Shown here one piece after another: positions 1 to 61,692 of a stretch of 64,000 bases of DNA; position 1 is the stretch's first letter, and the number at the start of each line of letters is the position of its first letter. A model generated the notes under the pieces. It saw only the letters and a program-made list of their open reading frames with translations, was not told the DNA's origin and made no database searches. The stretch covers positions 62,001 to 126,000 of the IMG/VR virus record IMGVR_UViG_3300049460_000312; one strand, 5' to 3'. A program made the position numbers and the translations under genes.

Positions 1-292
1 CACCCGTGGCCGTGACACCGACTTGACCCACCACGACGGTTAGATGTTCGCCCGGGGTCACGGGGATTTGGTTCTTCCAGCCTAGGCCACCACCACCCCC
101 TGAGGACCCCCAATGGCCTGTATCCTTGAAAGTGTTAATCCAGCCACCCCCGCCTGCACCGATACCCACCCCGCAGAGGAAGTAGACACCGCCCGGCACC
201 ACGAAGTCATACGTACCCGGCGTGGTAAAGGCCATCTGACCCGGCCCAGCCGCGACAGTCTTAGGCTTAATTGTTAAGAGCATTTCCAACAT
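1..292 (-). CDS. Glycine-rich tail-fibre-like protein (N-terminal part; runs off the window edge; not in the ORF track)
   Basis: Manual translation from the ATG at 292 gives MLEMLLTIKPKTVAAGPGQMAFTTPGTYDFVVPGGVYFLCGVGIGAGGGG...WKNQIPVTPGEHLTVVVG. This is a clear paralog of 304..1155 (AFTTPGTY...GGGGG...IPVTPGE). Confidence 0.8.
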   Translation of the reverse strand, partial: MLEMLLTIKPKTVAAGPGQMAFTTPGTYDFVVPGGVYFLCGVGIGAGGGGWINTFKDTGHWGSSGGGGGLGWKNQIPVTPGEHLTVVVGQVGVTATG

Positions 293-303
293 AGCTATCC
301 TTT

Positions 304-1155
304 TTACACATCCGGCACGTAATTGGGATAAGTGCGGCCCGTACCCCAAACAATCCGGCAAGCACCGGTCTGGGCAGGATCATTGGCGAAACCCGGTCCG
401 CCTTCGCTGGCACCACCACCGTATTCACCTGAGCCGGGATACTGAGAACCAGCCCCGCCCTTAGTATTAGCGGCCGTACCTGCCCCAGCGCCATTTGAGC
501 CAGCACCCAGAATACCTACACCACCGCCGCGGCCACCGGCCCCAGAACCACCCCGTAGCACGCCAAAGCCGCCACCGCCACCGCCACCGGTGCCGTTGGC
601 ACCCGGTGTGCCTGCGACGTTAGCGCCACCGGCCCCACCATTGCCTGAATAACCACCCGCACCACAACCGCCGCCGGCATATTCCCAGTAATAGACAGCC
701 GGTGTACCTGAGTCACCGCCGCCATCGCCGATACCGCCCGCATTGGTATTCAGAATCGTGGCACTTTCTGTTTGACCGCCCCCCGTGCCGCCATTAGCTT
801 GCAGCAGCACGGTACTGCCGCGCAGAATTTTCGTAACACCGCCATTACTAGCACGACCTGATTTCACGCTGGTGCCGCGATCACCTACGATAATGGTGAG
901 CGTTTCTCCGGGCGTCACTGGAATTGAGGTTTTCCAACGCAGTGAACCGCCGTAGCCTGCCGAACCCCACCCACCGGTGGAGCCTGGGCTACGATCCCAG
1001 CTGCCGCCACCGCCACCCACCCCGACTGCTGAAATAGAAAACACACCTGCTGGCACTACCCAGGAGTACGTACCGGGTGTCGTAAAAGCCACCTGATTAT
1101 TACCAACCGTCTGGCTAGTGCCTGTACCCTTTATCTGCAATAAGGCTTCTAACAT
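304..1155 (-). CDS. Glycine-rich tail-fibre-like / virion protein
   Basis: The probable start is MLEALL at 1155, inside ORF 304..1311 and downstream of a hairpin-TTTATGCCGC element. FTTPGTYSWVVPAGV, VGGGGG, PVTPGETLTIIVG and GGGGGG tracts are typical of glycine-rich phage fibre domains. Confidence 0.7.
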   Translation of the reverse strand: MLEALLQIKGTGTSQTVGNNQVAFTTPGTYSWVVPAGVFSISAVGVGGGGGSWDRSPGSTGGWGSAGYGGSLRWKTSIPVTPGETLTIIVGDRGTSVKSGRASNGGVTKILRGSTVLLQANGGTGGGQTESATILNTNAGGIGDGGGDSGTPAVYYWEYAGGGCGAGGYSGNGGAGGANVAGTPGANGTGGGGGGGFGVLRGGSGAGGRGGGVGILGAGSNGAGAGTAANTKGGAGSQYPGSGEYGGGASEGGPGFANDPAQTGACRIVWGTGRTYPNYVPDV

Positions 1156-1296
1156 TGCCGTACCCCGTTTGACTAATTCTTCGACATAGGATTTTGCGGC
1201 ATAAAGGAAAGAGAGGTGATCCCCTCCTTCCTTGTCTCCAAAAATTGACGGCATAAAAAGATCGAGCGGTTGCCCGCTCGATCTAGTAATTGCATG

Positions 1297-1667
1297 ATGG
1301 TGAAGCTGCACCCTGCCGCCGTAATCTCCTCGTACGTCGGGACCCTACTCGCCTATCCTGCAATCGGGGCACTCGGGAGAATGTCCTTAGGGTAGTGATC
1401 TTTTTCGCGTGGTAGCTTATCCGCCCAGGGGACGGGGTAATGCAAGGGGGTTAGGTGGCTTCGTCCTATCGCAGGATACTGCGCACCTGAACCGTACAGA
1501 TTGTCAAAGAAAGCGCTGCGTCATCCCGACGTGGGCGCTACTTGGTGGATTCTTCAGGACGTGATTGGGCTCCGGAATGATTACTTCTAAATGGCATGCC
1601 CTGCCTGCGTGTCAGTCTCGGTGTCATTGCTTTTGCTGTGTTCCCCGATGGGATTTAATCAGCCTGT
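1297..1667 (-). ncRNA. Candidate structured non-coding RNA (about 370 nt)
   Basis: No credible ORF. Long-range complementarities: 1321-1329/1574-1584, 1334-1342/1524-1532, 1354-1361/1471-1478, and a crossing 1342-1347/1388-1393 pair. The minus-strand ends AGGCUG...CAGCUU-C-ACCA can pair. Confidence 0.3.
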
Positions 1668-1719
1668 GTCGACGTTTGAGACCTTACTGCGTTTCCACAT
1701 AACATACAGCGATAGGCTG

Positions 1720-2052
1720 TTATTTTTTACCCTGCTCTTTCTTCATGTCCTGCAGCAGGTCATGGAGTTCCTGGGCCTGCTCCGGTGCACGCTTCTCCAT
1801 GATCTCTAGCATCAGGTCGCACATGTACGGGGGCTGGTTGATAAACTCGGTAAAGGACATGTGAAAGGCGGTGCCAATCTTCAGATCGGCAAACGCTTCC
1901 AGACGCTCGCGCAAGCGAGAGGCCACGATCGCATCTTCACACCAGTGATGTCTCACCAGCGCAAAGTGGTCGTCGGTTGCGGCCCGATGGTCGTAGATAC
2001 CATGTGACTGCTCATACCGCTCCCGCATCAAGATCTGCACATCGGTGCTCAC
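1720..2052 (-). CDS. Hypothetical protein
   Basis: 110-aa ORF with phage-like codon usage, co-oriented with 2163..3869. Confidence 0.7.
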   Translation of the reverse strand: MSTDVQILMRERYEQSHGIYDHRAATDDHFALVRHHWCEDAIVASRLRERLEAFADLKIGTAFHMSFTEFINQPPYMCDLMLEIMEKRAPEQAQELHDLLQDMKKEQGKK

Positions 2053-2162
2053 GAACCTTTTGGGTACGCGAGCGATGTCGCCGGTATGCTCCTCGATGCG
2101 GACCTCTTCGCCGAACTTCCAATCCCCGACATGCTTGGAATTGGCGATTTCGGCTTCTGTGG

Positions 2163-3869
2163 TTAGCGGCGGCTGATGATATCGACGCGCTGCGCGAGAA
2201 GGGTAAAAAAAGTGTTCACCACATCGATCGGAATCAGGTGCGGGAAGCGGGGCAAACCCATTTCCTTGCCGCTGGTTTCCGGGATCGCAATCAGGGCACG
2301 CGTGGAGTCGTCCTTGAACTTGTTGATCGCTTCGTCCACCAGGCGGGTCGCTTCCTCATCCACCGACAGCACGTTGAGCACTTCCGCGATATCCTCACGG
2401 CTGGTGTTCTCGTTGCCTTCGATGATGATCGACTTGACCCAGGCGCCGTTGTTGCGCAGGCGCGAAGCCCGTGCGTGCGTCTCGATCATGCGGTTGCGTT
2501 CGGCTTCGTTAGGGGCGGCCTGCGTGAACGTCGAGTCCACGGTCTGCACGATACCCGCAATCCAGTGCTCGCCATCGGCGATGTAGTTGTCCACATCGGT
2601 CGAGGCCACGAGCACTTCCAGGCCCGGCTTGATTTCCACCCGACGACCGTTGGCGAGCGACGGAATGAACGTGGCCTGGTAGTCCTTCACCTGGTCCAAG
2701 GTCATCTTGCCGCGCTGACGGTTGGCCATGTGCGCCCGGTGCTTCGGCTCGAAACTGGCGTTGTCCACCCACATCAGCTTGCCCAGGTTGATCTTGGCGG
2801 AGACCGTTTGGGTATTCTCGATCCCTTCCTTGGTCACCAGCGAGCGCACGTAGTCGAAACCACGCGGCCAGATCAAACAAGCCAGGCCCCAGAACAGGAT
2901 GTTCAGATCCTGAATCTTGATCAGTGAACGCAACTCTTGATTGCTGTCCACCCGGACGCTATGCTCGTAGATGTGCTCGAAGCAGAAGTCGAGCAGCCAG
3001 CTGTTGATGTAGCTCTGCTCGTTGGAGAACACCAGGCCGAAGGTCTCGCGACCCAGCTCGATCTTCTCTTCCTGCAGACGGCGTTGCAGCTCGATGAGTG
3101 CCGACTCGGTCGGCGTGGTGAGCGTGATCCAGAAGCCCGAGTGCCACAGCGGAATCGAGACGATGCCGCCCAGTCCCATGATTGAGCGTACGCGCAGGAT
3201 ACCCTTCTCACCAGTGTAACCACCCGCGCCGGCTTCAGCGATCTTCGGGGCCGAGAAACCCAGCTTGCCCGATTCCGCTTCCAGATACTGCAGATAATTA
3301 CTGCCGTCGAAATTCACGGAAGCTTCAAAGCGACGGTCCACGTAGACACTGCGCGAAGCAGCCGCCACGATGGACTCGTTCCAGTCAGCGCCCTTGCCGG
3401 TACGCAGCGAGTTCGGCGACACAAACGCACGGATGCGCTCGTCCACCTTCTTGCCGCGCTCCGACAGGAAGAACATCACTTCGTTCTGGCCGTTCAGGTC
3501 CGTGCGCTCCGACAGAGGCACCGGTGTACTGGTGTAGTCCATCGTGAGTGTGACGCCCTTGTTCTCCGCCGGCCCGAGCGACAGGCCGTCGAAGTCGTTG
3601 TTCTCCGGCGCGCCTGGGGTGGCCAGGTTGATCGTACCACTGGTGGTCTGACCCACGAGCACCGGACGTTCTTTCTGGTCTTGCTGCGGCGCTGCGGCCG
3701 CAGCCGCAGACGTAGCCGGGGCTGCCGGAGCAACCGCCGCAGCAGCAGGCGCGACAGCCGCGGGGGCAGGCGCCCGTACGGGCGAGTTAATCGTCACCAC
3801 CGGATCTTGCGCCGGGAGTTGCGACGGATCGATCGCGGGCGGATTGCCTTGTTCGTTGTTCTCACTCAT
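2163..3869 (-). CDS. Large hypothetical protein, probably a conserved phiKZ-like structural protein
   Basis: 568-aa ORF with strong codon bias; a Pro/Ala-rich N-terminal linker precedes a globular region. No motif recognised. Confidence 0.6.
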   Translation of the reverse strand: MSENNEQGNPPAIDPSQLPAQDPVVTINSPVRAPAPAAVAPAAAAVAPAAPATSAAAAAAPQQDQKERPVLVGQTTSGTINLATPGAPENNDFDGLSLGPAENKGVTLTMDYTSTPVPLSERTDLNGQNEVMFFLSERGKKVDERIRAFVSPNSLRTGKGADWNESIVAAASRSVYVDRRFEASVNFDGSNYLQYLEAESGKLGFSAPKIAEAGAGGYTGEKGILRVRSIMGLGGIVSIPLWHSGFWITLTTPTESALIELQRRLQEEKIELGRETFGLVFSNEQSYINSWLLDFCFEHIYEHSVRVDSNQELRSLIKIQDLNILFWGLACLIWPRGFDYVRSLVTKEGIENTQTVSAKINLGKLMWVDNASFEPKHRAHMANRQRGKMTLDQVKDYQATFIPSLANGRRVEIKPGLEVLVASTDVDNYIADGEHWIAGIVQTVDSTFTQAAPNEAERNRMIETHARASRLRNNGAWVKSIIIEGNENTSREDIAEVLNVLSVDEEATRLVDEAINKFKDDSTRALIAIPETSGKEMGLPRFPHLIPIDVVNTFFTLLAQRVDIISRR

Positions 3870-3884
3870 GTTGCGAGTTCCTGG

Positions 3885-4685
3885 TTAAGCCGGTTCTGCT
3901 TCGGCTGCGGGCGCGGCGGCCTGCGGTTCTTCGGGAACGGGCACGGGATCGGCACCAGTCGTGTCGGCGACGATATTGCGGATCTTCGCGAGATTGCTCA
4001 GCAGCTTGTGGTTCAGTTCCGCGGCGAGTTCCGGGTTCGTGTCCTTCAGCTTGAGCAGTCCTTCTTGCAGCTGTTCCGAGGCATGCACGACGAGCGGCAT
4101 CAGCGCGCTATCGTAACGCTCCATAAACTGCACGTATTCCGAGAACACCGCGCAGGAGATCATCAGGTCTTCCTGGCTGATCGCGCCCTTGTCCTTGTCC
4201 TTGTGCTGGGCACGGATCTTGCCGAGTTCTTCGACGAGCTTCTTCGTGTCGTTGGTGATCGCGTGGATGTTGCGCGAGAGCAGACGCTTGTTGGTGACGT
4301 GCACCAGCAGCTCTTCTTCCTTCAGCAGCGGCACGAGAGCCAGCGACGTACGCAGCAGGTCGATACAGGCGAAGTAGATGCCGTTGACTTCGGTCCAGGC
4401 GTCGTTGGTCGCGAAGTAATGATCCGCGTGCTTTTCCCACGAACGCTTCTCGCCCTTACGGCTGCGCTGGTTGGCACCGATCGTGCCCTTGCCCATTTCC
4501 TGGACAGCGTCCGACAGCAACTTCTTGGCGCGAGGCGACGGCACCGCTGCGGCGGCCGTCATCAGTTGTCCTACCGTGGCGATGGCCGCGACGGAGTCTT
4601 GATGCTGTTCTGCTTCCTTGAGCTGAGCGGCCGGCGTCTTGGGCCACTTGATGCCCGGATTTTTGGGTCGGGAGTTCTTTGCCAT
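3885..4685 (-). CDS. Hypothetical helical protein
   Basis: 266-aa ORF with a CACATTAC promoter-like motif upstream (4723-4730). Confidence 0.7.
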   Translation of the reverse strand: MAKNSRPKNPGIKWPKTPAAQLKEAEQHQDSVAAIATVGQLMTAAAAVPSPRAKKLLSDAVQEMGKGTIGANQRSRKGEKRSWEKHADHYFATNDAWTEVNGIYFACIDLLRTSLALVPLLKEEELLVHVTNKRLLSRNIHAITNDTKKLVEELGKIRAQHKDKDKGAISQEDLMISCAVFSEYVQFMERYDSALMPLVVHASEQLQEGLLKLKDTNPELAAELNHKLLSNLAKIRNIVADTTGADPVPVPEEPQAAAPAAEAEPA

Positions 4686-4862
4686 GGTAGTAGTTTGGTA
4701 ATTCGGGGTGGTGATGGAACATGTAATGTGGCGAATCTTTTGATACGTCGAAAATGACGTCCGCCAAATACAGCACTACAGAATTTCAGGCAAGGTAAAT
4801 AAATACATGAAAACTATTTACCAGCGCTTCTGGGTTCTATAGAAAGACATGAGGAAGTAATA

Positions 4863-5741: not shown

Positions 5742-5747
5742 ACCGTC

Positions 5748-7088: not shown

Positions 7089-7089
7089 A

Positions 7090-7129
7090 GCGGCATAGCG
7101 GACGGGCCTGGGCCCGTCCTTTATGTCGC
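7090..7129. promoter_or_regulatory. CATA-hairpin-TATG intergenic element (terminator and/or late promoter)
   Basis: GCGGCATA-GC-GGACGGGCC-T-GGGCCCGTCC-TTTATGTCGC; the TATG lies about 30 nt upstream of the 7157 start. Confidence 0.65.
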
Positions 7130-7156
7130 ATTTTATGTCAAGCTGAGGAATACACT

Positions 7157-7858
7157 ATGTTAGAACTTTTATTAGCAGGGAAGGGCCAGCCTGCGCAAAT
7201 TGGTGTGCAGTATAACGGGATTATTCCGGCGGCTTCCCTCATTACGGGTTCAGCACTCTGGGCAGCCATTGGCGCCAGTGGTGGAACCGCTTTTAATGAC
7301 ACCGAAGGATGGCTCAGCTTCGTCCTCGATGGCAAGACTTTGCTAGTTGCCAAAAAAGCTTTTCGTTATAGCGTCACATGGACATCCATCTACAACGCTG
7401 GAGCAGTGTATGGACGTGATGACACGGGACCTGCCGGTCTGTCTTATGCAGGCCTGACAGCGGCGGCGCAGAACAAACGTGTCACCATTAACGGCACGAC
7501 TTACAAGGTGAGATTGCTCACCGGATCAAACACGAACCCGGCACCGAACACGACGGGGGATGCCTTGACCACCACGGCGAACTCGGAATGGGATCGTTTG
7601 ATGTATGCGGTGGCTGCTTCCCGACCGGCTATCTACACCGGTCCCGTCTTGGACAATCTCTCTGACATGGATCTGGGAATCGTCAGCAAAGATGCCGGTG
7701 AAGGCAACGGAGGTTATACCTGGTGTGTGGAACAACACGGCTATGGTGCTACGTATCGCGTCTGTCGTGGATTCTACGATGTGGGCTTTGTGTATCGTGA
7801 AACAGTGAGTTTGTCCAATATTGGCTGGGGCTGGCGTCCAGTGCTCGAAGCCATTTAA
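7157..7858 (+). CDS. Virion/tail-associated paralog-family protein (WRPVLE family)
   Basis: Aligns by eye with 13011..13742 and 60997..61692 (ITGSAL, GWLxF, YxxGAVYG, RVTING, VRL, SEWxRL, C-terminal WRPVLE). Confidence 0.7.
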   Translation: MLELLLAGKGQPAQIGVQYNGIIPAASLITGSALWAAIGASGGTAFNDTEGWLSFVLDGKTLLVAKKAFRYSVTWTSIYNAGAVYGRDDTGPAGLSYAGLTAAAQNKRVTINGTTYKVRLLTGSNTNPAPNTTGDALTTTANSEWDRLMYAVAASRPAIYTGPVLDNLSDMDLGIVSKDAGEGNGGYTWCVEQHGYGATYRVCRGFYDVGFVYRETVSLSNIGWGWRPVLEAI

Positions 7859-7976: not shown

Positions 7977-10184
7977 TTAGAACTGGAAGCCAGCCGAGCC
8001 GACGGCTGCGACATCGCCGCGGGTGCTGCTGGACAGACCCGCCTTGATGACCCAACGGTTGTCACCCGTCACCGTCGACACGCCCACTGCAATGCCTTGC
8101 TGACCATGGTAGGTCGACACGGCAGCAGAGATCATCGACTTGCCCGCTTGCGTCGGTTGCGGCAGACCTGCGATCGCCAGCACCGACGCAAGACCACCGT
8201 AGTTGTCTTTCTTGTAGCTGTCGAACTGGTTCTGCAGATTGCTCACCGCCTTGTCGGTGTAAGCGTACGACTGCTGCTGTGCGTAATTCACCTGACCCAC
8301 GTTGGCGGCATCCGTCGGCGCAGTACCGGCCGCTACGTGCGTGATCTGACGTTCGTTGCCGGCAGCGCCCACCGACACCGTGTTGTCACGATCGGCCACC
8401 GAGTCGGCACCCAGCGCTACCGAGTTCTTCGACGTGACCTGAGCTTTCGCACCCATCTGGCCCTTGTTCATGCTATCGCGCCAGTTGGACAGGTTGTCGA
8501 TCGACTTGGTGTTGCCAGTGATCTGCGTTTGCAGACCTGCTTCCGCCGTGGTAGCCCGTGTCGTTTCGTTGTCGATCTTCGTGTTCAGGCCAGCTTCAGC
8601 CGTTTGCGCGCGAGTCGATTCCGAATTGATGTTGGCCTGCAGCTGGCCTTCCGCGGCTTGGGCACGACCGGACTCAGCACCGACCGCCTTGTCCGTGTAG
8701 TGGTTGGCCGAGCCGAGCGTCTTGCCTGCGACGTAGTCGGTGTAACCCGCCGACGTAGCCACTGCGCCCACGTAAGCTGCCGCAGCAGCTGCATTTGCGT
8801 GCTGGTTCGCTGACGCGAGCGTCTTGGCGTCACCCTTATCCGCATACGACTGAGCGGACTGGAGCGTCGCTGCGTCGCCCGCTTGCTGTTGGGTTTGCAG
8901 GTCATGAGCTACGTTGTTCGTGTAATCGAACGACGTATCGATGGCGGTTTGCACACCCTTGGCAACTGACGTGTCGGTGTAGCTGTTAGCCGACTGCAGT
9001 GTTGCAGCATCACCAGCAGCCCGGGCTTGGGCTTCGGCCTTGATGTCGTGGGCATTCTTGGCCGAGGAAGCCAGGGCTGCGCCACCAACGGCCAGCGCGA
9101 TGTCAGCAGTGCCTTGCGCATGCGCTGCAGCACCTGCGGCGGCGTTAGCCGTACCTTGTGCTTTGTTCACTCCCGACTGCAGACCGGCTTCTGCCGTTTC
9201 AGCACGCGACGTTTCGGACGAGATGGCTTTACCATTTGCGTCTGCCTTGGCATTGGCTGTGTTGGCCGTTGCTTGGGCGTGCTGTGCGTCGCCTTCTGCC
9301 TTCACGGCGATGGCACCCGCTACCAGACCAACACCGAGGGCGGCATCTGCCGTACCTTGTGCATGGGCGGCGGCGCTGCCCGCTGCGGCAGCGGCTGCGT
9401 CAGCATGGTTAGCCGTGCCCTGAGCAGCCGTGGCAGCCTTACCTGCTGCATCGGCCTTCGAGCCCGCGACGTTCGCTGCAGCAGCCGCACCTTCCGCGAC
9501 ACCTTCAGCGTGACCCGCGACGATTGCTGCACCCGTAGCCGTGATCGTGGCACTGGTTGCGATACCCACTGCAACGTCTGCCTTTACGTCCGCACCCTTG
9601 GCGATGGTCGAGGCTTGGTTCGCCGTCGAGACGGCCTGTTGCGAGTTAGACAAGGCCGTGCCGGCTGTGGCGCTCACGCCGTTGACTTGCGATTGCAGGT
9701 TGGCTTCGGCACCCTTGGCACGTGCGGCTTCGTTGGCGACACCGATATCGGCATGGATATTGGCAGAAGCCAGCGTACCGGCTGCGGTATCGGTCACTTC
9801 CTGATGCGTGGCGCTGTTGAGCTGCAGCTCATTGATCGCCGAGGAGTTCGCACTGGTTTGCGTTTGCACCTTAGTGACGTTGGCGTTGGTCGCGTCAAGC
9901 TGGGAGGAGGTTGCAACACCTGTTACCGAACCCGTGACCTTGGTGCCGTTCGACAGCGTCGTGGTAGACGTGTTGCCGTTGATCGACACACTCGTGACCG
10001 TTGCACCGTCTTTGCCGGCTGCACCGGTTGCGCCGATGTCACCCTTGTCACCCTTGTCGCCCTTGTCGCCCTTCGGGCCCTGCTGGCCTTCGCAGGAGAA
10101 AATGTTGCAACTCGTGGCGTGCGCACCCATCGAGAGTGCGGCGAAGGAAGCGAAGACAGCAGCAGCAATGAGATTCTTTTTCAT
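7977..10184 (-). CDS. Trimeric autotransporter adhesin (YadA/Hia family) with a collagen-like segment
   Basis: Sec signal [23 protein letters not shown]; (GXY)10 collagen repeat; Ala-rich stalk with SANxYTD motifs; NSVALG head; neck [20 protein letters not shown]; YadA anchor [14 protein letters not shown]...beta strands ending AGFQF. Confidence 0.92.
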
Positions 10185-11667: not shown

Positions 11668-12330
11668 TCATGATGTCGGTCTGGAGAGCTTGAGGTACTT
11701 CAGATATCCAGGAAACATGTAATTACCTGTCTTGTGTCCACCAATGGTCAGTTCAGTGTCGCGCGGCACCGGGAAACTGGCAAAGGACTGGACAGCGTTA
11801 GTCGTCAGGTTCTTGATCGTCATGCCATTAGTACGCTTCTGGATTAGGAACTCCTGATAAGTCTGGGGGTTAGCACCAAAACCCTGGTTACGCTGGAAGG
11901 TGGTATCGCCCTTACTGAGAAAAACCTGGAACCACGTACTGGTGAACTGGTCAAACAGGACCGAGCTTCCGGGGTCTGCAACGTTGGCATACGTGCCTGA
12001 GTTGAAAATATAGACCGAGGGTGTGGTGTTCGGTTTTAGGATACCCAGCTGCAGATCATAATCCTGCGTAGAAAAGTTATTCAGTGGATTATTCGGATTA
12101 TGAAAGCAATTGATTGCATTGAACTGGAAACAACGCCCTACACCCGCCACATCCACCACACCAAAATTGGTAGCCTGGCTGGCTGCTGCACCGAGGGTAG
12201 TAAATGTGATACCCTGCGCGCGGTCCACGATGGTCTTGGTGCCCAGGGCCACATCTTCGAAATGCAGATCAAGCAGGCTCGGCGGCGCCGGAGCGGCCTG
12301 ATTGCGTCGGATAAGTAAGGATTCAAACAT
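11668..12330 (-). CDS. Putative virion lectin-like (ConA/LamG-type beta-sandwich) protein
   Basis: Probable start MFESLL. LLDLHFED...GRCFQFN...LTIGG...FPGYLKYLKL follows the LamG-like pattern. Confidence 0.5.
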   Translation of the reverse strand: MFESLLIRRNQAAPAPPSLLDLHFEDVALGTKTIVDRAQGITFTTLGAAASQATNFGVVDVAGVGRCFQFNAINCFHNPNNPLNNFSTQDYDLQLGILKPNTTPSVYIFNSGTYANVADPGSSVLFDQFTSTWFQVFLSKGDTTFQRNQGFGANPQTYQEFLIQKRTNGMTIKNLTTNAVQSFASFPVPRDTELTIGGHKTGNYMFPGYLKYLKLSRPTS

Positions 12331-12714
12331 CGCACTAGCCTGTAAGAAATAACATAGGATGCAGTAATCACCTTTGTATGAGATTCCTCTCATAACCCGG
12401 AGACACCCGATGCTGTATATGCCGACCATTGTTGCGTTCATGGGCGCACGTGCCATGTTTCAAATGAGCTGGATGCTGCCCATGACCTTGATGCAGATGG
12501 CAATGCCGGCTTTGCCGGTGCAAGAGAAGCAGGCTAAGGCTTAATTTACCCGGTCTCCCTATCAGATGCGAGTGCGTGACACCACTCGTGGGGATGGAGC
12601 GAAATGCCCACCAGAGGTGGGGGAAATATTAAGTTATTATACCTAGTGCGTGAGCACTCTGGAATCTTATAGAGCAACAAGAACAACAACACCCCACCTA
12701 ACGGAGGTTAGACC

Positions 12715-12936
12715 ATGAGCAGCACTGCAATCGCTCCGGATACGACGGAGCTGGAAGAAGAATGCATGGACCGGCTACTGCCGTGGAAGTGCTACTCGGA
12801 CAATCTGCGTCGCTACGAGGAGTATCCCTCACTCCAGGCACTGGCAGAAGCGAAGAGCATGAGTGTGAGTGTCATCATGGATGCCATTGCCAATCACAAG
12901 GGCAATCTGTACGACATGCATATCGTCAAGCGATGA
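12715..12936 (+). CDS. Small hypothetical protein
   Basis: 73-aa ORF with a GGAGG RBS, followed by a hairpin. Confidence 0.6.
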   Translation: MSSTAIAPDTTELEEECMDRLLPWKCYSDNLRRYEEYPSLQALAEAKSMSVSVIMDAIANHKGNLYDMHIVKR

Positions 12937-12944: not shown

Positions 12945-12978
12945 ATAGCGGGAGGGTCATTCCCTCCCGTTTATGCCG
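12945..12978 (+). promoter_or_regulatory. Hairpin-TTTATGCCG element
   Basis: GCGGGAGGG-TCATT-CCCTCCCGT followed by TTATGCCG, about 35 nt upstream of the 13011 start. Confidence 0.6.
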
Positions 12979-13010
12979 GAATTTTATGTACAATCTTTAG
13001 GCAGAACGCT

Positions 13011-13742
13011 ATGTTGGAGCTATTACTGGCTAGTCCTAAAAAGGCCATCGTAGGATTACCGAGTAACACCGGCCCAGGCCCAACTACTTTAGTTGGCTCG
13101 AACGCCACGGCAGGGTTCTACGGGGAACTCACCTCGGCCAGCTTTATCAGTGGGAGTGCGCTGGCGGCAGCCTGCGGTCTCGTTGCAGGCACCCTGATGA
13201 ATGACACCGCGTCGTGGCTGAAGTTCTTTCTGGATGATAAAGTTCTCTTTATTCCTAAATTGGGCATTCGCACCAGTTTTTACTGGCAAGACCTGTATCA
13301 GGCTGGTGTAGTCTATGGCGACGGGACTATTGGTAAGAACCCGGCAGGTGCAAATCGATTACAGAATGCCCGAGTCTCCGTGCAGGGTTATACCTTTATT
13401 GTTCGCCTCATGAAGTGTGCGAACAGCGATCCCTATGTCGATTACACAACTAACGATCCGGTATCCAGCACGACTTCGGAATGGAATCGGTTGATGTACA
13501 ACATCTGCGATACCGCTGCGTCTAAAAGCTCGCAGGTGGGGCCGAACTGGACGCACTATACCGAGGCGCAGCTCGGGATGAACTACTACACCTGGGGGCA
13601 GGAGACGCCGTCTAACTCGGGGGCTCAAGCTCGCATCGTCCGTGCGGCGAGCTCGCTTTCGTACGCGACCTATGGCTGGCTCACCACCCCCTATAACACC
13701 TGTGTCTGGCGACCCGTGCTGGAACTGGTGCCACCCGCATAA
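13011..13742 (+). CDS. Virion/tail-associated paralog-family protein (WRPVLE family)
   Basis: Start MLELLL inside ORF 12762..13742; paralog of 7157..7858 and 60997..61692. Confidence 0.7.
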   Translation: MLELLLASPKKAIVGLPSNTGPGPTTLVGSNATAGFYGELTSASFISGSALAAACGLVAGTLMNDTASWLKFFLDDKVLFIPKLGIRTSFYWQDLYQAGVVYGDGTIGKNPAGANRLQNARVSVQGYTFIVRLMKCANSDPYVDYTTNDPVSSTTSEWNRLMYNICDTAASKSSQVGPNWTHYTEAQLGMNYYTWGQETPSNSGAQARIVRAASSLSYATYGWLTTPYNTCVWRPVLELVPPA

Positions 13743-36850: not shown

Positions 36851-37471
36851 TTACAGGCTTGCGCCGTACTGGCTGGTCGGGTCTTGCTCGGCCGCCGCGT
36901 ACGCAGCTTCTGCCGCGTCGTGCGTATCGAGAATAGCCGCCACCTTACGCAAGGTCAGCATCTTGTCGCGATCGTCAGGACGGTCTGCGTACAGACTGTA
37001 CTGCCACGATTGGGTTTCGTGCTCCACAAACACGCCATTCATCAACTGACGATAGGCTTCCTGTTCGTGACCGACGCGACCGGGTTCCGGATCGACGTAC
37101 GTGTCGCTGTACCCTTCGAGTTTGCCGTCGTACCATGCCTGTCGGATGACCGGGCTAGTCATCACCCAACCTTGCATCTGGCTTTGGGCAGACTGCAATT
37201 GCGGAATCGTCAGCAATGTCTCAATCATGTCTTGTCCCATCATGGACTCGACCTGCGTGAGCACAGCTTCTGCGGCGAGCACCGCCGCATCACTGTTAAT
37301 TGCATCGAACATGGCCATCGATCGTTCATAGACCTTCTTGCCATATTCCGTTCCCGCACTTGCCAGCGAACTGATCTGGTTCTGCAGATACTGAACCGTA
37401 TTACTGCTCAGCGTGCCAAACAAGCCTTTCCCGAACAAGGAACCTGTCGGGGCGGAGACGAGTCGTGCCAT
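36851..37471 (-). CDS. Conserved-type chimallivirus hypothetical protein
   Basis: 206-aa ORF with an AAAGGA RBS, downstream of nvRNAP beta'. Confidence 0.7.
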   Translation of the reverse strand: MARLVSAPTGSLFGKGLFGTLSSNTVQYLQNQISSLASAGTEYGKKVYERSMAMFDAINSDAAVLAAEAVLTQVESMMGQDMIETLLTIPQLQSAQSQMQGWVMTSPVIRQAWYDGKLEGYSDTYVDPEPGRVGHEQEAYRQLMNGVFVEHETQSWQYSLYADRPDDRDKMLTLRKVAAILDTHDAAEAAYAAAEQDPTSQYGASL

Positions 37472-56318: not shown

Positions 56319-56334
56319 GCAAGAAAAAAAGCAA

Positions 56335-56382: not shown

Positions 56383-56383
56383 T

Positions 56384-57709: not shown

Positions 57710-57796
57710 GATTGTGGCGAGGTGGCGTGACAAAATAAAAGACAGGCAGGCCAGTGCCGGGAAACCCCTTGACGGGTCTCCCGGTCTGGTCAGTTG

Positions 57797-58345
57797 TTAT
57801 TTGAACAGCGAGTGGATGCCGCTGCGCGTATGGGGTTTCACCAGGTCGACGTCATCGATGGTGATCTCCCAGCACAGCTGGTCTTCCACTTCGACGTCTT
57901 TCAGCTTCACATAGATGCTGAACACGTCGGTCATGCTATTGCGGTTGCGATAGACACCAGCGAACACGTCGAGCGAGTCTGCGTACTTGGCAATCACCGC
58001 GAGAATCGGGCGTAGGTAGTCTCGGGTCGTGACCACCGTATCACCACGGGCCCACGCCTTACCCTGCACGAAACTGTCGCGCAACATCGCGTCAAGACGA
58101 ATCGGTTGTACGTGGTGCAGCCGGTGCTTGTTCTTCAGGATCTTCCCTTCCAGGATTTCCGAGAGGGGGATGAAGTCCAGATTGTAATTCAGATAACCGC
58201 TCCGGGCGAAAAGAGCAGTGTGCTTACTGTCCGCAAAGCCTTGTTCAAAACGGAAGTGCTCGCCAAACTGATTCGCAGCAGCGTAGGCGGCGTGGTTCGC
58301 TTCCTTGGTGATGGCTTTGATTGCGGCGCGGGAGATAGTCTTCAT
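57797..58345 (-). CDS. Hypothetical (probably early) protein
   Basis: 182-aa ORF with a CATATGAC promoter-like motif at 58403-58410. Confidence 0.65.
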   Translation of the reverse strand: MKTISRAAIKAITKEANHAAYAAANQFGEHFRFEQGFADSKHTALFARSGYLNYNLDFIPLSEILEGKILKNKHRLHHVQPIRLDAMLRDSFVQGKAWARGDTVVTTRDYLRPILAVIAKYADSLDVFAGVYRNRNSMTDVFSIYVKLKDVEVEDQLCWEITIDDVDLVKPHTRSGIHSLFK

Positions 58346-58625
58346 AACGGGCTGATTTAGAGTTAGTGTACAGTGAGTCCATGGCTAGCATAGCTCAGAA
58401 CAGTCATATGCGTTTGAAACGAATTTCACTTCACTACGACAAGGGGTACAGCTGACTGACTCTCAGATCAATTACGCGAAGTGATAAAAAATGTCCCTAG
58501 CGGCAAAAAAAAAAAGAACTTCGACACCGGCGCGGTCAGGCGCCGTGTGTCGAAAGCCGTTATGTGCGCTTGATCAACTTCCTAGCAAATCACTCTTGTT
58601 GGCTGTTAGGGCGTCAGGATGTGAC

Positions 58626-59135
58626 TCACTCCTCCGTGAACGTCAGGATGCAGTTCAACTTGACGCCGTTGAACTCATCCACCACGGTGATGGCGCGCGT
58701 GCCGTCCAGGCCCGAGTAGTGGTAGTACCGGGTGTAGGGCGGCAGGGTCGCTGCGAAGTTGGCGATAGCGCGAAGCCGCCACGAGATCAACGGGCTTGCT
58801 TCGTTATTCGCCAACTGCTGCAGCTGAAGAATTTGTATTTCGTTCAGCGGATTGGAATCGGCTGCAAACCACGGGTAATCTAGACTACCCACCGAAACGT
58901 CCAGCACCGATTGACCTCGGTAGATGAACTTCTCGTGGATGCCTTCCCCGTTGTAGGAGTCGACTGCGTTATTGAACACACGGTAGAAAATCTCAGGGCT
59001 GTTCGTGTCGATCAGACCCATAGCCATGTCACGGTATCGCGTGTACATGGTGAACGAGGTTTCCGGGTTCACGCGTTGCGAGAACTGTGCGTTCGGAAAG
59101 AAGTTAAATGCGTTTGGAGCTGTAGCGGTCAACAT
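58626..59135 (-). CDS. Hypothetical protein
   Basis: Start MLTATAP with a GAGGA RBS. Confidence 0.7.
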   Translation of the reverse strand: MLTATAPNAFNFFPNAQFSQRVNPETSFTMYTRYRDMAMGLIDTNSPEIFYRVFNNAVDSYNGEGIHEKFIYRGQSVLDVSVGSLDYPWFAADSNPLNEIQILQLQQLANNEASPLISWRLRAIANFAATLPPYTRYYHYSGLDGTRAITVVDEFNGVKLNCILTFTEE

Positions 59136-59139
59136 GGTA

Positions 59140-59680
59140 TTCCTCACCTGTGGTCGGTATAGTCAAGCGGATAAGGCTTTAATGCCTCTTATAACTGGTC
59201 ACGATCTGGCCATTGCCGTAACCTTGGGTCCTGACTTACTTGGCACTTCAAAGAACACGAATTTCCCGTACTCTGCAATGAAAGTGTGTTGTCTCAACAC
59301 GGCGCTGTTGTCTGGGTGGGCTAGTAGCACCCGTAGGTCTCGTACCAGGCAACAAGGCATTCATTGTCTTTCACCACTTTTATTGTCCAGCTTTATTGCT
59401 GACCTATGGTGTTACAAAGAGCAGTACACTGCGCGTCAGATTCTCTGGACTTCATGACTAGGCGGTCCTCCTAGTCCCAGAGACCGATTCGCATTTGGGA
59501 GAATCGATGGATGGTTTCAAGAGCGGTCTTTATTTGTCGAATTTAGTCATCGTAGCTCATCCTGATGGAGTGTCTACTGCGCTGAGAGTGAAACGTGTTA
59601 GGTGTGCGAGAGGTCGTACTGGTTCGTATAGTCCTTAAACGGTAAAGTGTTAGAAAATTTTGCGCATAAAGCGAGAAAAA
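59140..59680 (-). ncRNA. Candidate long structured leader or ncRNA
   Basis: About 540 nt with no convincing ORF. Hairpins include GACTAGG-N7-CCTAGTC, CGATTC-N10-GAATCG, GTGTTG-AGA-CAACAC and GGGTG-N9-CACCC. Confidence 0.3.
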
Positions 59681-59846
59681 AGTGTGGTATCCAAGAAGAC
59701 ACGCTACAAGGAAGAGCGGAGTTAGTGGATACCACGAAGCCTGTTTGTCTTACCTTCAACATCGCAAAGCCAGCACCTCGCTCATGCTCTGCAATGGATA
59801 CATGGATGTAGTAAAAAATCTCTATTCCTCATGTACCACGAAGTAT

Positions 59847-60551
59847 TTAGACGATGACCCAGTCCAGACGCGTGTAATACGAGAGTACACTCGGCGACAC
59901 TAGGGCCAATGAAATAACAATCCCGGAGGGACCATGTGAGCATGCAAAGGTGTGCACGCGCACCGTATTCTTGACGGCCTTCAGGAAAGCGATGATTTCA
60001 AGCAATACGGGCAGTGCTTCCTGGCCAGATTTCATCTTGGCGCCTGCCCACTTGTGATTTTCGTTTTCCAAAGAGTCTTCCAGATACGTGACAACATTCG
60101 CCACCGGCTGGGTGGGGTTGCTTGCGTCCTCTGCGAAGCACTGCTGAAAGGCCCGACGCTCGTCAGCCGTCGTCGGCTGGATGGTCAGGTTCAAGCCCTG
60201 GTCATCTCCTACGTCACGCAGACTCTCCTGAATGACATAGCGGTTGTTGGCCTTGCGTGTGTAGTGCGTCAGGTGGTATTCAAATACCCCTGGTTCACAC
60301 AACCGCGTAATCTTGGCGCAAGCTCGGTGCAACTGTTTCGTAAGCTCGCCCATGGCCTTGGGATAAAAGCGCCGACCATAGCGTTCTACAAACGCTACGT
60401 CCGAATCTTCCATGACACCACCGTATGGTTTAAACCACAGGTGCAAGGTATCGTTCTCAGTCATGATGTGTTGTTTCCAAAAAGTCGATTTCAATCCGGC
60501 GTATGCAGCCTCATGCATACGAGCGAACAATAAAGTCATAGAACCAGACAA
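59847..60551 (-). CDS. Hypothetical protein
   Basis: ORF of up to 234 aa; start uncertain (60551, 60539 or 60464). Confidence 0.6.
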   Translation of the reverse strand: MSGSMTLLFARMHEAAYAGLKSTFWKQHIMTENDTLHLWFKPYGGVMEDSDVAFVERYGRRFYPKAMGELTKQLHRACAKITRLCEPGVFEYHLTHYTRKANNRYVIQESLRDVGDDQGLNLTIQPTTADERRAFQQCFAEDASNPTQPVANVVTYLEDSLENENHKWAGAKMKSGQEALPVLLEIIAFLKAVKNTVRVHTFACSHGPSGIVISLALVSPSVLSYYTRLDWVIV

Positions 60552-60699
60552 CCCTTATAGTTGTTACAGTCGAAGTCCGAACTACTGGACAGAATAGACT
60601 CCTGCCTCATAAAAGAGCCGTAAATTACGTTGACAGCATAAAGGAGAGGCTAAACCTCTCCCTTTAATATCTTTTTTACCTATTCTATTGATCTTGTGT

Positions 60700-60945
60700 A
60701 TGCTTAGACGCTACTCGTAAGCTTGGTGGGCCTTCGGCCCCACCTGCGCCTATGCTGGGTATGTTGGATCACCTGCGATGATGAGACTATCATCATGCTC
60801 ACAGTCTGACGCATGGGGCGTCAGCCTGGAATAGATAGTCACCTAACACTAAGTTATTTCTCCAACCCTAGCGCAGCTCACTTCTATCCCCTCTACCAGT
60901 GCATTCACTCCTGACCACACTGATCAAAACATAGGGGAAGGAGTG
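60700..60945 (+). ncRNA. Candidate small structured RNA (strand uncertain)
   Basis: Consecutive hairpins GGTGGG...TTCG...CCCACC, GATGAT...ATCATC, CTGACGC-N5-GCGTCAG and CACTCC...GGAGTG; no ORF. Confidence 0.3.
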
Positions 60946-60996
60946 TAAAAAAATGAAAAGCCTAGAACGAATCGTATGTAACCTGAGGATTCGATT

Positions 60997-61692
60997 ATGC
61001 TCGAAGCATTACTACAAATACCCGCCGGTGCTGCCGCTGGAGGTGGCTCTGGCCTCAATGGCAATCCTACCACCCTTATCGCTGGTGATTCAAACGCAGG
61101 CTTCTATGGCGAGACTGATGGCAGCCAACTGATCACTGGCACTGCCCTGGCTAGCGCGATTGGTTTAGGCGCCGGCACCGATATCAATTCAACCGGTGGC
61201 TGGCTCAAGTTCTCCTGGAAGGGAAAGCCGCTGTACATTGCCAAGATGCCGTTCCGCGATAACTGTCCTTGGCAATACATCTACCAGAGCGGCGCTGTCT
61301 ATGGTGACGATACTGTCGGCACTTATCCTAGTGGCTTTAACCGCGTGCAGGACGCACGAGTTACCATCAACGGTGTCGTGCATCGAGTGAGACTGATGCA
61401 CATGGCTCTAACCGCCACCTCGCCACACGGCGTCCGTCCGGTTGCTGGAACCGAAGCCAATGATCTCTGGCTTGCGATCAAGGCCAATGCGGGCGGGCTT
61501 GCTAGCTATACCGATGCCCAGGTCGGACAGCCCACCGGGTCTTACTACTTCTCCGGCATTGAGTCCATGACCGGCACTACGACGATGTGTCTGTTGATGA
61601 ACAACGCTCTTCAGCTGTCGAACGACAACAAGACGCAAGGCAACGTCAACGGCGTTCACTTCCTGTGGCGACCGGTCCTGGAACCGATTTAA
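60997..61692 (+). CDS. Virion/tail-associated paralog-family protein (WRPVLE family)
   Basis: MLEALL start; paralog of 7157..7858 and 13011..13742. Confidence 0.7.
   Translation: MLEALLQIPAGAAAGGGSGLNGNPTTLIAGDSNAGFYGETDGSQLITGTALASAIGLGAGTDINSTGGWLKFSWKGKPLYIAKMPFRDNCPWQYIYQSGAVYGDDTVGTYPSGFNRVQDARVTINGVVHRVRLMHMALTATSPHGVRPVAGTEANDLWLAIKANAGGLASYTDAQVGQPTGSYYFSGIESMTGTTTMCLLMNNALQLSNDNKTQGNVNGVHFLWRPVLEPI

What the first reader, a model, noticed from the sequence alone, without database searches (positions are those of the whole stretch)
1..61692. Six dispersed fibre-like genes of three different fold types share an N-terminal M(L/F)ExLL tag
Seen: the likely starts at 292 (MLEMLL), 1155 (MLEALL), 7157 (MLELLL), 12330 (MFESLL), 13011 (MLELLL) and 60997 (MLEALL) are nearly identical. 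What follows the tag differs: glycine-rich domains (two genes), a LamG-like sandwich (one gene) and the WRPVLE family (three genes). At least three (1155, 7157, 13011) sit just behind a hairpin-TATG element. Inference: the 6-residue tag is a common docking or assembly peptide that plugs interchangeable receptor-binding heads into the same virion site. This would make a modular, genome-dispersed adsorption toolkit.
Basis: partly seen in the sequence, partly recalled or inferred. Interest (0 to 1): 0.72.

Follow-up and report, generated by a model that had tools for sequence, protein, structure and literature searches.

The report
Shared address tag on phage lectins
A giant soil phage gives a dozen small sugar-binding virion proteins of unrelated folds the same six-residue N-terminal tag, M(L/F)ExLL; relatives as distant as phiKZ use the same tag, including on a protein shown by experiment to be needed for adsorption to some hosts, so the tag is most likely a common plug for interchangeable adhesins.

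Summary
The window lies in a 283-kb phiKZ-like (chimallivirus) genome from a rhizosphere metagenome. M[LF]E.LL occurs 13 times in the six-frame translation. Twelve of these begin ORFs of 220-432 aa; shuffles give about 0.25 hits and none on a long ORF. Synonymous codons vary, so the peptide is what is conserved.

The tag sits on three folds. One is a C-type-lectin-like domain, the N-domain family of phiKZ gp83. The second is ConA/LamG-like sandwiches. The third is a glycine-rich domain. AlphaFold leaves the tag as a free, low-confidence tail.

The same tag heads phiKZ gp83 and gp298, six PhiPA3 genes, 201phi2-1 gp452/gp456 (virion proteins by mass spectrometry) and 11 FLC1-1B genes. RP31 and SPN3US have none. 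Published transposon work shows gp298 is needed for adsorption to two wild Pseudomonas isolates.

A composite hairpin-TTTATG...TATGT element occurs seven times in the genome, always in front of a tagged gene.

The proteins are globular lectin modules, not fibres. The docking role of the tag and its virion site remain inferred, and no socket was identified. I rate this a new variant of modular receptor-binding systems.

The parts
1..292 (-). 5' part of tagged gene 1 (MLEMLL, glycine-rich domain). The full gene is 280 aa and runs off the window start. It has no promoter box of its own and begins 11 nt after the stop of the 1155 gene.
   Evidence: phrog_4474 E 9e-48 for the full protein; PF21722 is below its cut-off
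304..1155 (-). Tagged gene 2 (MLEALL, glycine-rich domain, 283 aa plus stop).
   Evidence: phrog_4474 E 3e-47; homologues beginning MFELLL, MIEMML or MLEFLM
1184..1233 (-). Upstream cassette of gene 2: hairpin at about 1233-1204, box 1 TTTATG at 1205-1200, box 2 TATGT at 1188-1184 (28 nt before the ATG).
7100..7138 (+). Upstream cassette of gene 3: GC hairpin at 7100-7119, box 1 TTTATG at 7120-7125, box 2 TATGT at 7134-7138 (18 nt before the ATG). A GAGG lies 8 nt before the ATG.
7157..7858 (+). Tagged gene 3 (MLELLL, WRPVLE C-type-lectin-like domain, 233 aa). It has no counterpart at this site in FLC1-1B. Its 3' half is the most diverged stretch in related metagenome populations.
11668..12330 (-). 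Tagged gene 4 (MFESLL, ConA/LamG-like beta-sandwich, 220 aa).
   Evidence: phrog_6011 E 4e-30; hhalign to the tagged Laminin_G_3 paralogues, E 9e-5 and probability 60%; the model (pLDDT 64) matches ConA-like lectin sandwiches
12352..12356 (-). Box 2 TATGT of gene 4 (21 nt before the ATG). There is no box 1.
12949..12989 (+). Upstream cassette of gene 5: hairpin at 12949-12969, box 1 TTTATG at 12970-12975, box 2 TATGT at 12985-12989 (21 nt before the ATG). It lies inside the longer possible ORF that begins at 12762.
13011..13742 (+). Tagged gene 5 (MLELLL, WRPVLE C-type-lectin-like domain, 243 aa).
   Evidence: AF2 pLDDT 93 with residues 1-10 at 56; VIA-align Z 5-7 to PvdO, TvpA, Lcl C-terminal domain, Mtd, Bd2740 and many CTLDs
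60975..60979 (+). Box 2 TATGT of gene 6 (17 nt before the ATG). A GAGG lies 8 nt before the ATG.
60997..61692 (+). Tagged gene 6 (MLEALL, WRPVLE C-type-lectin-like domain, 231 aa).

Best explanation
The six genes (twelve in the whole genome) encode small, globular, glycan-binding-type modules. The folds are a C-type-lectin-like 'WRPVLE' domain, ConA/LamG-like sandwiches and a glycine-rich domain. The proteins are carried on the virion as accessory, strain-specific adhesins.

Each begins with Met-(Leu/Phe)-Glu-x-Leu-Leu, followed by a short linker of 5-15 residues rich in Gly, Pro and Lys. The tag has the spacing of an LxxLL-type amphipathic turn of helix. I infer that it inserts, together with the free N-terminus, into a hydrophobic groove of a conserved core virion protein, so that any module bearing it is mounted at the same kind of site.

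Most of the genes travel as self-contained cassettes: terminator-like hairpin, TTTATG(C/T)CG, AATC(G/C)TATGT, SD, then the tag. This lets them be inserted anywhere in the genome, gained and lost between close relatives, and diversified in the binding half.

Shown:
- peptide-level conservation of the tag across folds and across chimalliviruses;
- the tag is not part of the fold;
- the lectin-type folds;
- the tag-specific upstream element;
- gene turnover between close relatives.

Taken from the literature: tagged homologues are present in virions, and one tagged homologue has an adsorption role.

Inferred: the tag is what docks the proteins, the socket is shared, and where the socket lies.
For: - Enrichment and exclusivity. 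Twelve of the 13 six-frame hits start long ORFs, and all 12 are lectin-type proteins.
- Peptide-level selection. Codons vary synonymously. Paralogue pairs are 80% identical in the tag and 21% elsewhere.
- The tag is a free tail. pLDDT is 56 for residues 1-10 against 97-98 in the domain. Residues 1-15 of the ConA-like model are below 50.
- The same tag occurs on further folds in distant relatives. phiKZ gp83 has the WRPV domain plus a Kelch propeller, and gp298 has a Kelch propeller. PhiPA3 has six tagged genes. 201phi2-1 gp452 and gp456 are virion proteins by mass spectrometry.
- phiKZ orf298::Tn fails to adsorb to two wild isolates but adsorbs to PAO1 (PMC12676376).
- The domains are modular. 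The WRPVLE and glycine-rich domains occur with other N-terminal modules or tags in other lineages: Mtd_N, collagen, an FN3-like module, MLADRVRM and MDDTIFKIMFGA. Phage CBB puts its own tag, MLPFxRLxEYGN, on Kelch/LamG virion proteins.
- TTTATG-N6-14-TATGT is found 7 times in the genome, always in front of a tagged gene, and is conserved in FLC1-1B.
- Turnover. Six of the 12 genes have no close orthologue in FLC1-1B, and RP31 has none at all.
- The 3' half of gene 7157 is about 20% diverged in related populations, against 1-2% in the flanks.
Against: - No direct evidence that this phage's proteins are in its virion. It is an uncultured metagenome genome and no RNA run was listed.
- No socket was found. 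No gene other than the WRPVLE genes themselves is present in all four tag-bearing genomes and absent from RP31. One complex prediction gave no answer.
- The cryo-EM atlas of phiKZ and the phiKZ capsid paper do not place gp83 or gp298.
- phiKZ gp83 carries a 'structural head protein' note in RefSeq. SPN3US paralogues whose C-termini resemble WRPVLE were found in tailless particles. The site may therefore not be on the tail.
- Tag codons are unusually AT-rich and use rare TTA, so an mRNA-level constraint acts as well.
Confidence: 0.55

Rival explanations
1. The tag is a head-incorporation signal, like the capsid-targeting sequence of the T4 internal proteins. The proteins would be packed in or on the capsid rather than mounted on the tail. 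If they are internal, they are ejection proteins, not adhesins.
For: phiKZ gp83 is noted as 'structural head protein' in RefSeq. SPN3US gp146/149/152, whose C-termini resemble WRPVLE, belong to a paralogue family detected in tailless particles. T4 internal proteins share a short N-terminal targeting peptide (established knowledge; recalled in PMC5694885).
Against: The same RefSeq notes also label gp145, gp146 and gp157 as head proteins, yet the atlas places gp157 in the baseplate, so the notes are unreliable. Lectin, LamG, discoidin and Kelch modules are extracellular binding folds. gp298 acts in adsorption. The tag has M at P3, which does not fit the S/A/G-x-E protease motif. The SPN3US proteins lack the tag.
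Confidence: 0.12
2. The tag is a handle for folding, chaperone capture, stability or self-association of the modules, for example a short hydrophobic helix that clusters several modules. It would not be a plug for a virion socket.
For: The tag is a short hydrophobic amphipathic peptide left unplaced in the monomer models. A DUF4376 protein, a family found in tail-fibre assembly proteins, sits in the lectin gene array and is absent from RP31 along with the array. No socket was found.
Against: Three unrelated folds that are modelled without help from the tag are unlikely to share a folding need. The same domains fold with quite different N-termini in other phages. The strict position at residue 1 fits end-on insertion better.
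Confidence: 0.15
3. The conservation serves the mRNA or translation start: an open, AT-rich initiation region, a slow rare-codon ramp, or a regulator binding site tied to the special upstream element. The peptide would be a by-product.
For: GC of codons 2-6 is 0.33 in tagged genes against 0.48 in other genes. TTA makes up 12 of 33 Leu codons in the tags against 2% genome-wide, and CTG 1 of 33 against 45%. The upstream element is private to these genes.
Against: Nucleotides differ freely at synonymous sites while the residues stay fixed. The same residues are kept in phiKZ, described in the literature as AT-rich, and in this 56% GC genome. E3, L5 and L6 are 31, 30 and 31 of 33. AT-richness alone would allow K, N, I or Y.
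Confidence: 0.08
4. The tag is an inherited leftover of one ancestral gene start, spread by recombination at the shared promoter and 5' end, with no present function.
For: The shared upstream cassette could serve as a recombination site.
Against: Proteins that are otherwise about 20% identical or unrelated in fold keep the tag at 80% identity. The tag is kept across genera that share no nucleotide similarity here. A neutral hexapeptide would have decayed.
Confidence: 0.05

Closest known systems
phiKZ gp298 (and gp83), PhiPA3 gp080-083, 201phi2-1 gp452/gp456
   Same: They carry the same N-terminal tag (MFELLL, MLELML, MIDLLM). gp83, gp452, gp456 and PhiPA3 gp081-083 have the same WRPVLE domain. 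gp452 and gp456 are virion proteins by mass spectrometry. gp298 is a dispensable, strain-specific adsorption factor whose gene lies away from the tail genes.
   Different: The phiKZ proteins add Kelch propellers. phiKZ has 2 tagged genes against 12 here. None of the papers read mentions the shared N-terminus, and a full-text search for the tag strings found no phage paper.
Conserved docking peptide of secondary receptor-binding proteins in Klebsiella podophages (KP32/KP34 type; PMC6872550, PMC13352976)
   Same: A short conserved N-terminal peptide mounts an exchangeable receptor-binding protein on the particle, giving a modular host range (abstracts seen).
   Different: [quoted passage not shown] The cargo there is a trimeric depolymerase spike. 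Here the cargo is small lectin-type domains of several folds, there are up to 12 per genome, the genes are dispersed, and the partner is unknown.
Shared N-terminal modules of chimallivirus fibres: phiKZ gp131/133/134/135 N-domains (PMC13250141) and DUF7941 modules of Goslar (bioRxiv 10.64898/2026.04.21.720040)
   Same: Paralogous virion proteins share an N-terminal attachment part and differ in the distal parts, which bind carbohydrate or cells.
   Different: Those attachment parts are folded domains of 100 residues or more. Here the shared part is six residues plus a linker. The tagged proteins give no DUF7941 hit.
Pectobacterium phage CBB gp425-431, gp442, gp443
   Same: A set of small Kelch, LamG_3 and phrog_6011-like virion proteins that all share one short N-terminal peptide.
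   Different: The peptide is different (MLPFxRLxEYGN) and the phage is unrelated (Rak2-like). The published paper does not describe it in the passages read.
LxxLL / FxxLF helical docking motifs of eukaryotic co-activators (established knowledge)
   Same: L(F)-x-x-L-L spacing, which forms one amphipathic helical turn that fits a hydrophobic groove.
   Different: This is only an analogy of mechanism. There is no homology and no test here.

Membership tests
phiKZ gp83 N-domain family (PHROG 16120/1062/3589; 'WRPVLE' domain) | Profile match over the domain, with a C-terminal G-W-R-P-V-L-E motif | tested here: met
   Genes 7157, 13011 and 60997 match phrog_1062 at E 2e-28 to 4e-48. W233, P235 and L237 are invariant in 47 sequences. 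phiKZ gp83 matches phrog_16120 at 8e-288.
phiKZ gp83 N-domain family | Presence in the virion | not testable with these tools
   Known only for homologues: 201phi2-1 gp452/gp456 by mass spectrometry. This genome is uncultured.
C-type lectin fold (Mtd / TvpA / Lcl C-terminal domain / FGE-like) | Fold match of a confident model | tested here: inconclusive
   The model has pLDDT 93. Foldseek E-values are only 0.03-0.2. VIA-align Z is 5-7.2, and nearly all of the top 50 rows are CLec/FGE-type folds. A Z below 8 is not decisive on its own.
Diversity-generating retroelement target (Mtd-like variable protein) | A reverse transcriptase encoded in the genome | tested here: not met
   No PF00078 match in the 283-kb genome; the controls did match.
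Pfam Laminin_G_3 (ConA-like lectin/glucanase) | Pfam match above the gathering score | tested here: not met
   Gene 12330 has no Pfam hit. Five tagged paralogues outside the window do match, at E 3e-8 to 5e-31.
Pfam Laminin_G_3 (ConA-like lectin/glucanase) | Remote homology or fold likeness of the 12330 protein | tested here: inconclusive
   hhalign to the tagged LamG paralogues gives E 9e-5 and probability 60%, and the alignment includes the tag. The low-confidence model (pLDDT 64) matches ConA-like sandwiches at TM about 0.55.
Pfam Gly_rich_2 (PF21722) | Pfam match above the gathering score (24.3 bits) | tested here: not met
   Scores are 19.3 and 13.7 bits. However, phrog_4474 matches at E 3e-47, and most database homologues carry PF21722.
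Docking-peptide RBP systems (Klebsiella KP32/KP34 type) | A short conserved N-terminal peptide on exchangeable binding proteins | tested here: met
Docking-peptide RBP systems (Klebsiella KP32/KP34 type) | An identified partner domain that receives the peptide | tested here: inconclusive
   The profile search found no candidate. The complex job scored 0.00, which is no answer.
T4-type capsid targeting sequence | An N-terminal peptide followed by a prohead-protease site (S/A/G-x-E in phiKZ-like phages), and an internal head location | tested here: not met
   The tag reads M-L/F-E, with M rather than S/A/G at P3. Location was not testable.
DUF7941 filament proteins (PF25613) | Pfam match | tested here: not met
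   None of the tagged proteins match. The genome has a separate DUF7941 gene at genome position 254276-254827.

The most novel reading that the evidence does not exclude
Chimalliviruses would use a six-residue, LxxLL-like 'address code' at the extreme N-terminus. This code lets any small glycan-binding domain be plugged into one conserved socket on the virion. Other jumbo-phage lineages would do the same with different tags: MLPFxRLxEYGN in CBB, and MLADRVRM in uncultured phages. Combined with a private promoter class, this would make free-standing adhesin cassettes that are gained, lost and diversified, and that set host range strain by strain. This would be a general rule of jumbo-phage host recognition that has not been described.
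Probability: 0.35. Interest if true: 0.75.

Novelty: new variant of a known kind. Interest (0 to 1): 0.62.

Why it matters
Host recognition by phiKZ-like nucleus-forming phages is poorly understood. Their cryo-EM atlases leave the flexible outer parts unassigned, and gp298 was only recently found to be an adsorption factor whose gene lies away from the tail genes.

A shared tag gives three things. First, it is a simple sequence rule for finding all such accessory adhesins in any chimallivirus genome: 12 here, 11 in FLC1-1B, 6 in PhiPA3, 2 in phiKZ and none in RP31. Second, it links gp298 to gp83 and their relatives. Third, it makes the question 'where do they attach?' directly testable with tag mutants and tag fusions.

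The finding also shows that the principle of a conserved anchor plus a variable head can shrink to a hexapeptide, and that different jumbo-phage lineages appear to have arrived at it with different peptides.

Tried and rejected
- Reading all six starts on the + strand. Starts 292, 1155 and 12330 give stops there and lie on the - strand.
- Nucleotide-level repeat as the cause. Rejected because of synonymous variation.
- Hairpin-TATG as the general late promoter. The hairpin-TATGCCG part is general in the genome, but the composite with a second TATGT box is private to the tagged genes.
- DGR targeting of the C-type-lectin-like domain. The genome has no reverse transcriptase.
- A phage tRNA-Leu(UAA) to explain the rare TTA codons. 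This genome has none.
- Phylogenetic-profile search for a socket gene present in tag-bearing phages and absent from RP31. Only the WRPVLE genes themselves fit. The 217-aa neighbour is a DUF4376 protein, a family found in tail-fibre assembly proteins, and was not considered a likely socket.
- One complex prediction: DUF7941 protein, DUF7941-like protein and gp130 homologue 1-390, against the 13011 protein. The score was 0.00 and the verdict 'no answer', so it is evidence neither way.
- RNA-seq support for the starts and promoters. No RNA run was listed.
- Literature search for the tag strings. No phage paper was found.
- A guessed PMC id for the phiKZ head-proteome paper was not held, so the source of gp83's 'head' note could not be read.
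- The first attempt to fold the 12330 protein used an alignment containing sequences from annotated-record loci.
- MIETLL at window 37228(-) is internal to a longer ORF and was not counted.

Full report
**What the window is.** The window is bases 62,001-126,000 of a 283,373-bp, 56% GC virus genome with direct terminal repeats. Its nearest public relatives are the Ralstonia jumbo phages FLC1-1B and FLC4-3B (83% nucleotide identity over about half of the first 14 kb), followed by RP12 and RP31 (76%). These are phiKZ-related phages (PMC5468394). The DNA occurs in rhizosphere and soil metagenomes, and no RNA run was listed.

**Check of the observation.**
- All six starts are real. Starts 7157, 13011 and 60997 are on the + strand. 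Starts 292, 1155 and 12330 are on the - strand.
- Across the genome, M[LF]E.LL occurs 13 times in the six-frame translation. Twelve occurrences head ORFs of 220-432 aa. The other six lie at genome positions 243312, 244030, 245338, 246737, 249881 and 278890.
- Twenty shuffles of the genome gave 0 or 1 hit each, never on an ORF of 60 aa or more.
- The codons for Leu2, Glu3, Leu5 and Leu6 differ synonymously from copy to copy.
- Over 33 tagged genes from five genomes, position 3 is E in 31, position 5 is L in 30 and position 6 is L in 31. Positions 7-16 are a variable stretch rich in S, T, G, K, P and A.
- Among the 12 paralogues, the tag is 80% identical on average and the remainder 21%. The conserved object is therefore a peptide.

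**Are these the true starts?** The tag ATG is the likely true start, for these reasons.
- Where a longer ORF is possible (12762 for gene 13011, 1311 for 1155, 12456 for 12330), the terminator-like hairpin and the TATG boxes lie inside the extension.
- A GAGG/AGGA sits 5-8 nt before three of the six starts (292, 7157, 60997). The scan found none within 50 nt of 1155, 12330 or 13011.
- Homologues from phages and metagenomes begin at the tag.

**What the proteins are.**
- Genes 7157, 13011 and 60997 match PHROGs 1062, 16120 and 3589, which are annotated 'virion structural protein'. phrog_16120 is the family of phiKZ gp83.
- With a 47-sequence alignment, AlphaFold2 models the 13011 protein at pLDDT 93. 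Residues 1-10 score only 56 and form no contact-rich structure.
- Foldseek gives only weak hits for this model. An exhaustive VIA-align search gives Z 5-7.2. The hits are PvdO, Treponema TvpA, the Legionella Lcl C-terminal domain, the Bordetella phage Mtd, Bdellovibrio Bd2740, TaqVP and dozens of animal C-type lectin domains. I read this as a C-type-lectin-like fold with moderate confidence.
- Gene 12330 matches phrog_6011 ('virion structural protein'). It aligns by hhalign to the tagged Laminin_G_3 paralogues (E 9e-5, probability 60%). Its low-confidence model (pLDDT 64) matches ConA-like lectin sandwiches. The matches include the lectin-like sub-domain of clostridial neurotoxin binding fragments, carbohydrate-binding modules and a cyanophage tailspike. 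This is a generic fold likeness only.
- Genes 292 and 1155 match phrog_4474 strongly and PF21722 (Gly_rich_2) below its cut-off.
- Outside the window, five tagged genes are Laminin_G_3 proteins, one of them with an added F5/8 type C domain. A fourth WRPVLE gene is also tagged.
- None of the proteins looks like a fibre. They are compact binding domains on a tether of 5-15 residues.

**Reach of the tag.**
- A degenerate DNA pattern and whole-genome scans found tagged lectin-type genes as follows: 12 here, 11 in FLC1-1B, 6 in PhiPA3, 2 in phiKZ (gp83 and gp298, both MFELLL), 2 in 201phi2-1 (gp452 and gp456, MIDLLM/MIDLML), and none in RP31 or SPN3US.
- In phiKZ and PhiPA3 the tag also heads Kelch propellers.
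- The annotated starts of 201phi2-1 gp452 and PhiPA3 gp082 miss the tag start.
- The binding domains are themselves modular. The WRPVLE domain is found behind Mtd_N, collagen and prepilin-type N-termini. It is also found behind an FN3-like 'W.N...VYR' module, in two genes of this genome. SPN3US gp146/149/152 have a similar N-terminus and C-termini ending ...ELVE.
- Other lineages use other short starts on the same domains. MLADRVRMGSGG appears on WRPVLE proteins and MLADKLRAASK on a glycine-rich protein. MDDTIFKIMFGA and MTTFRLRRAAAVTKR appear on glycine-rich proteins.
- The unrelated jumbo phage CBB begins nine small Kelch, LamG_3 and phrog_6011-like proteins, most of them annotated as virion or structural proteins, with MLPFxRLxEYGN.

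**Experimental anchors from papers.**
- 201phi2-1 gp452 and gp456 were identified in virions by mass spectrometry (record notes).
- A transposon study of phiKZ found that orf298 is dispensable on PAO1. An orf298::Tn mutant neither plaques on nor adsorbs to two wild isolates. gp298 is a low-abundance virion protein, and its gene lies away from the tail genes (PMC12676376). That paper does not mention gp83 or the shared N-terminus.
- The phiKZ structural atlas and the phiKZ capsid paper do not place gp83 or gp298.
- RefSeq notes call gp83 a 'structural head protein'. The same notes call gp145, gp146 and gp157 head proteins, while the atlas puts gp157 in the outer baseplate.
- In SPN3US, the paralogue family that contains the proteins with WRPVLE-like C-termini was detected in tailless particles. 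A head or neck location therefore cannot be excluded.

**The upstream element.**
- Hairpin-(T)TATGCCG units are common in this genome.
- The composite TTTATG-N6-14-TATGT occurs exactly seven times, against 0.6 expected. All seven lie 15-30 nt upstream of a tagged ATG.
- Tagged genes 12330 and 60997 carry only the second box, AATC(G/C)TATGT. Genes 292, 243312 and 244030 follow another tagged gene directly and carry none.
- FLC1-1B keeps the same arrangement.
- TATG is the core of phiKZ late promoters. I state this from my own knowledge of the phiKZ transcription literature and did not test it here. The private second box suggests a promoter sub-class of its own.

**Turnover and diversification.**
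- Six of the twelve genes have FLC1-1B orthologues at 50-83% identity. The other six, including 7157, 12330, 13011 and 60997, have none above 39%.
- Gene 7157 lies between the RNA polymerase beta' gene and the RNA ligase gene, together with the neighbouring 735-aa collagen/YadA-anchor gene. In FLC1-1B those two genes are adjacent.
- RP31 lacks the whole lectin array that lies downstream of the collagen-like gp146 homologue at genome 243-250 kb.
- Contigs from two related rhizosphere populations differ by about 1-2% in the flanking genes. In the 3' half of gene 7157 they differ by about 20%, or are scored 'same length, diverged'. These are assembler contigs only.
- The genome encodes no reverse transcriptase, so this is not DGR mutagenesis.

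**Mechanism.** The best reading is that these are accessory virion adhesins, and that the tag is a docking peptide. M-L/F-E-x-L-L has LxxLL spacing, which is one amphipathic helical turn. It lies at the very N-terminus, outside the fold, on a short flexible linker. I infer that it inserts into a hydrophobic groove of a conserved structural protein. The profile search found no gene limited to tag-bearing phages, so any socket must belong to the core set.

The rivals are these:
- a head-targeting signal;
- a folding or self-association handle;
- an mRNA-level start element;
- a neutral leftover.

The mRNA rival has one real observation behind it. Tag codons are AT-rich, and TTA makes up 36% of their Leu codons against 2% genome-wide. 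The genome has no tRNA-Leu(UAA). The invariance of the residues against freely varying bases, and their retention in phages as different as phiKZ and this one, show that this constraint is at most an added one.

**Novelty.** Conserved N-terminal anchors on exchangeable receptor-binding proteins are well known. Examples are the Klebsiella podophage docking peptides, the phiKZ gp131 paralogues and the DUF7941 modules. What seems undescribed is a hexapeptide shared across at least four folds and across chimallivirus genera. It links gp298 and gp83, comes with its own upstream cassette, and has parallels built from different peptides in other jumbo phages. A full-text search for the tag strings found nothing relevant. 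I therefore rate it a new variant of a known kind. The docking step and the site are still open.

Noticed in passing
window 7977-10184 (-): A 735-aa protein with collagen repeats and a C-terminal YadA-like membrane-anchor domain (PF03895, E 2.7e-14). This is unusual for a phage. It lies next to tagged gene 7157 and is absent at this site in FLC1-1B. Part of the gene attracts very high depth in metagenomes, because its collagen/repeat sequence is shared with other organisms.
   Followed up: partly
tag codons of all 12 tagged genes (e.g. window 7160-7174, 13014-13028): The tags use rare AT-rich codons. TTA is 12 of 33 Leu codons against 2% genome-wide, and CTG is 1 of 33 against 45%. GC of codons 2-6 is 0.33 against 0.48 in other genes. 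The genome has no tRNA-Leu(UAA), unlike phiKZ, PhiPA3 and 201phi2-1.
   Followed up: partly
window 1184-1205, 7120-7138, 12970-12989; genome 245389, 246782, 249926, 278845: The composite motif TTTATG-N6-14-TATGT occurs 7 times in 283 kb, always directly upstream of a tagged gene. The single hairpin-TATGCCG unit is widespread in the genome.
   Followed up: yes
window 7509-7858: In contigs of related rhizosphere populations (runs X2, X4), the 3' half of the 7157 gene is about 20% diverged or 'same length, diverged', while flanking genes differ by 1-2%. This is a local hot spot in the predicted binding half.
   Followed up: partly
L019 (Pectobacterium phage CBB) 3049-8317 and 12824-14145: Nine small proteins, most annotated as virion or structural proteins (Kelch, Laminin_G_3, phrog_6011-like), all begin MLPF[PSAT]R[LMI].[EQK]Y[GA]N. 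A different N-terminal tag is used in the same way in an unrelated jumbo phage.
   Followed up: partly
proteins P0029, P0032-P0037, P0056, P0066 (WRPVLE family) and P0132 (glycine-rich family): Metagenomic members of two different domain families begin with MLADRVRMGSGG or MLADKLRAASK. The glycine-rich family also has groups that start MDDTIFKIMFGA and MTTFRLRRAAAVTKR. These look like lineage-specific tags.
   Followed up: no
L001 5962-6714 (201phi2-1 gp452); L002 6001-6672 (PhiPA3 gp082): The annotated starts do not coincide with the tag ATG. gp452 is annotated 13 codons too long and gp082 55 codons too short.
   Followed up: yes
genome 239000-255000 (L015): An adhesin locus. It holds a DUF7941 gene, a 1193-aa collagen-like gp145/146 homologue with a fibritin-C-like part, and a DUF4376 protein. 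These are followed by one tagged WRPVLE gene, two WRPVLE genes with an FN3-like N-module, and four tagged LamG genes. The array and the DUF4376 gene are absent from RP31.
   Followed up: partly
L004, L037, L038 (phiKZ RefSeq record): The notes 'structural head protein' are attached to gp145, gp146 and gp157 as well as gp83. The 2026 cryo-EM atlas places gp157 in the outer baseplate, so these notes are not a safe guide to location.
   Followed up: partly
window 37228 (-): MIETLLTIPQ... resembles the tag but lies 84 codons inside ORF 36851-37471. It was not counted as a tagged gene.
   Followed up: no
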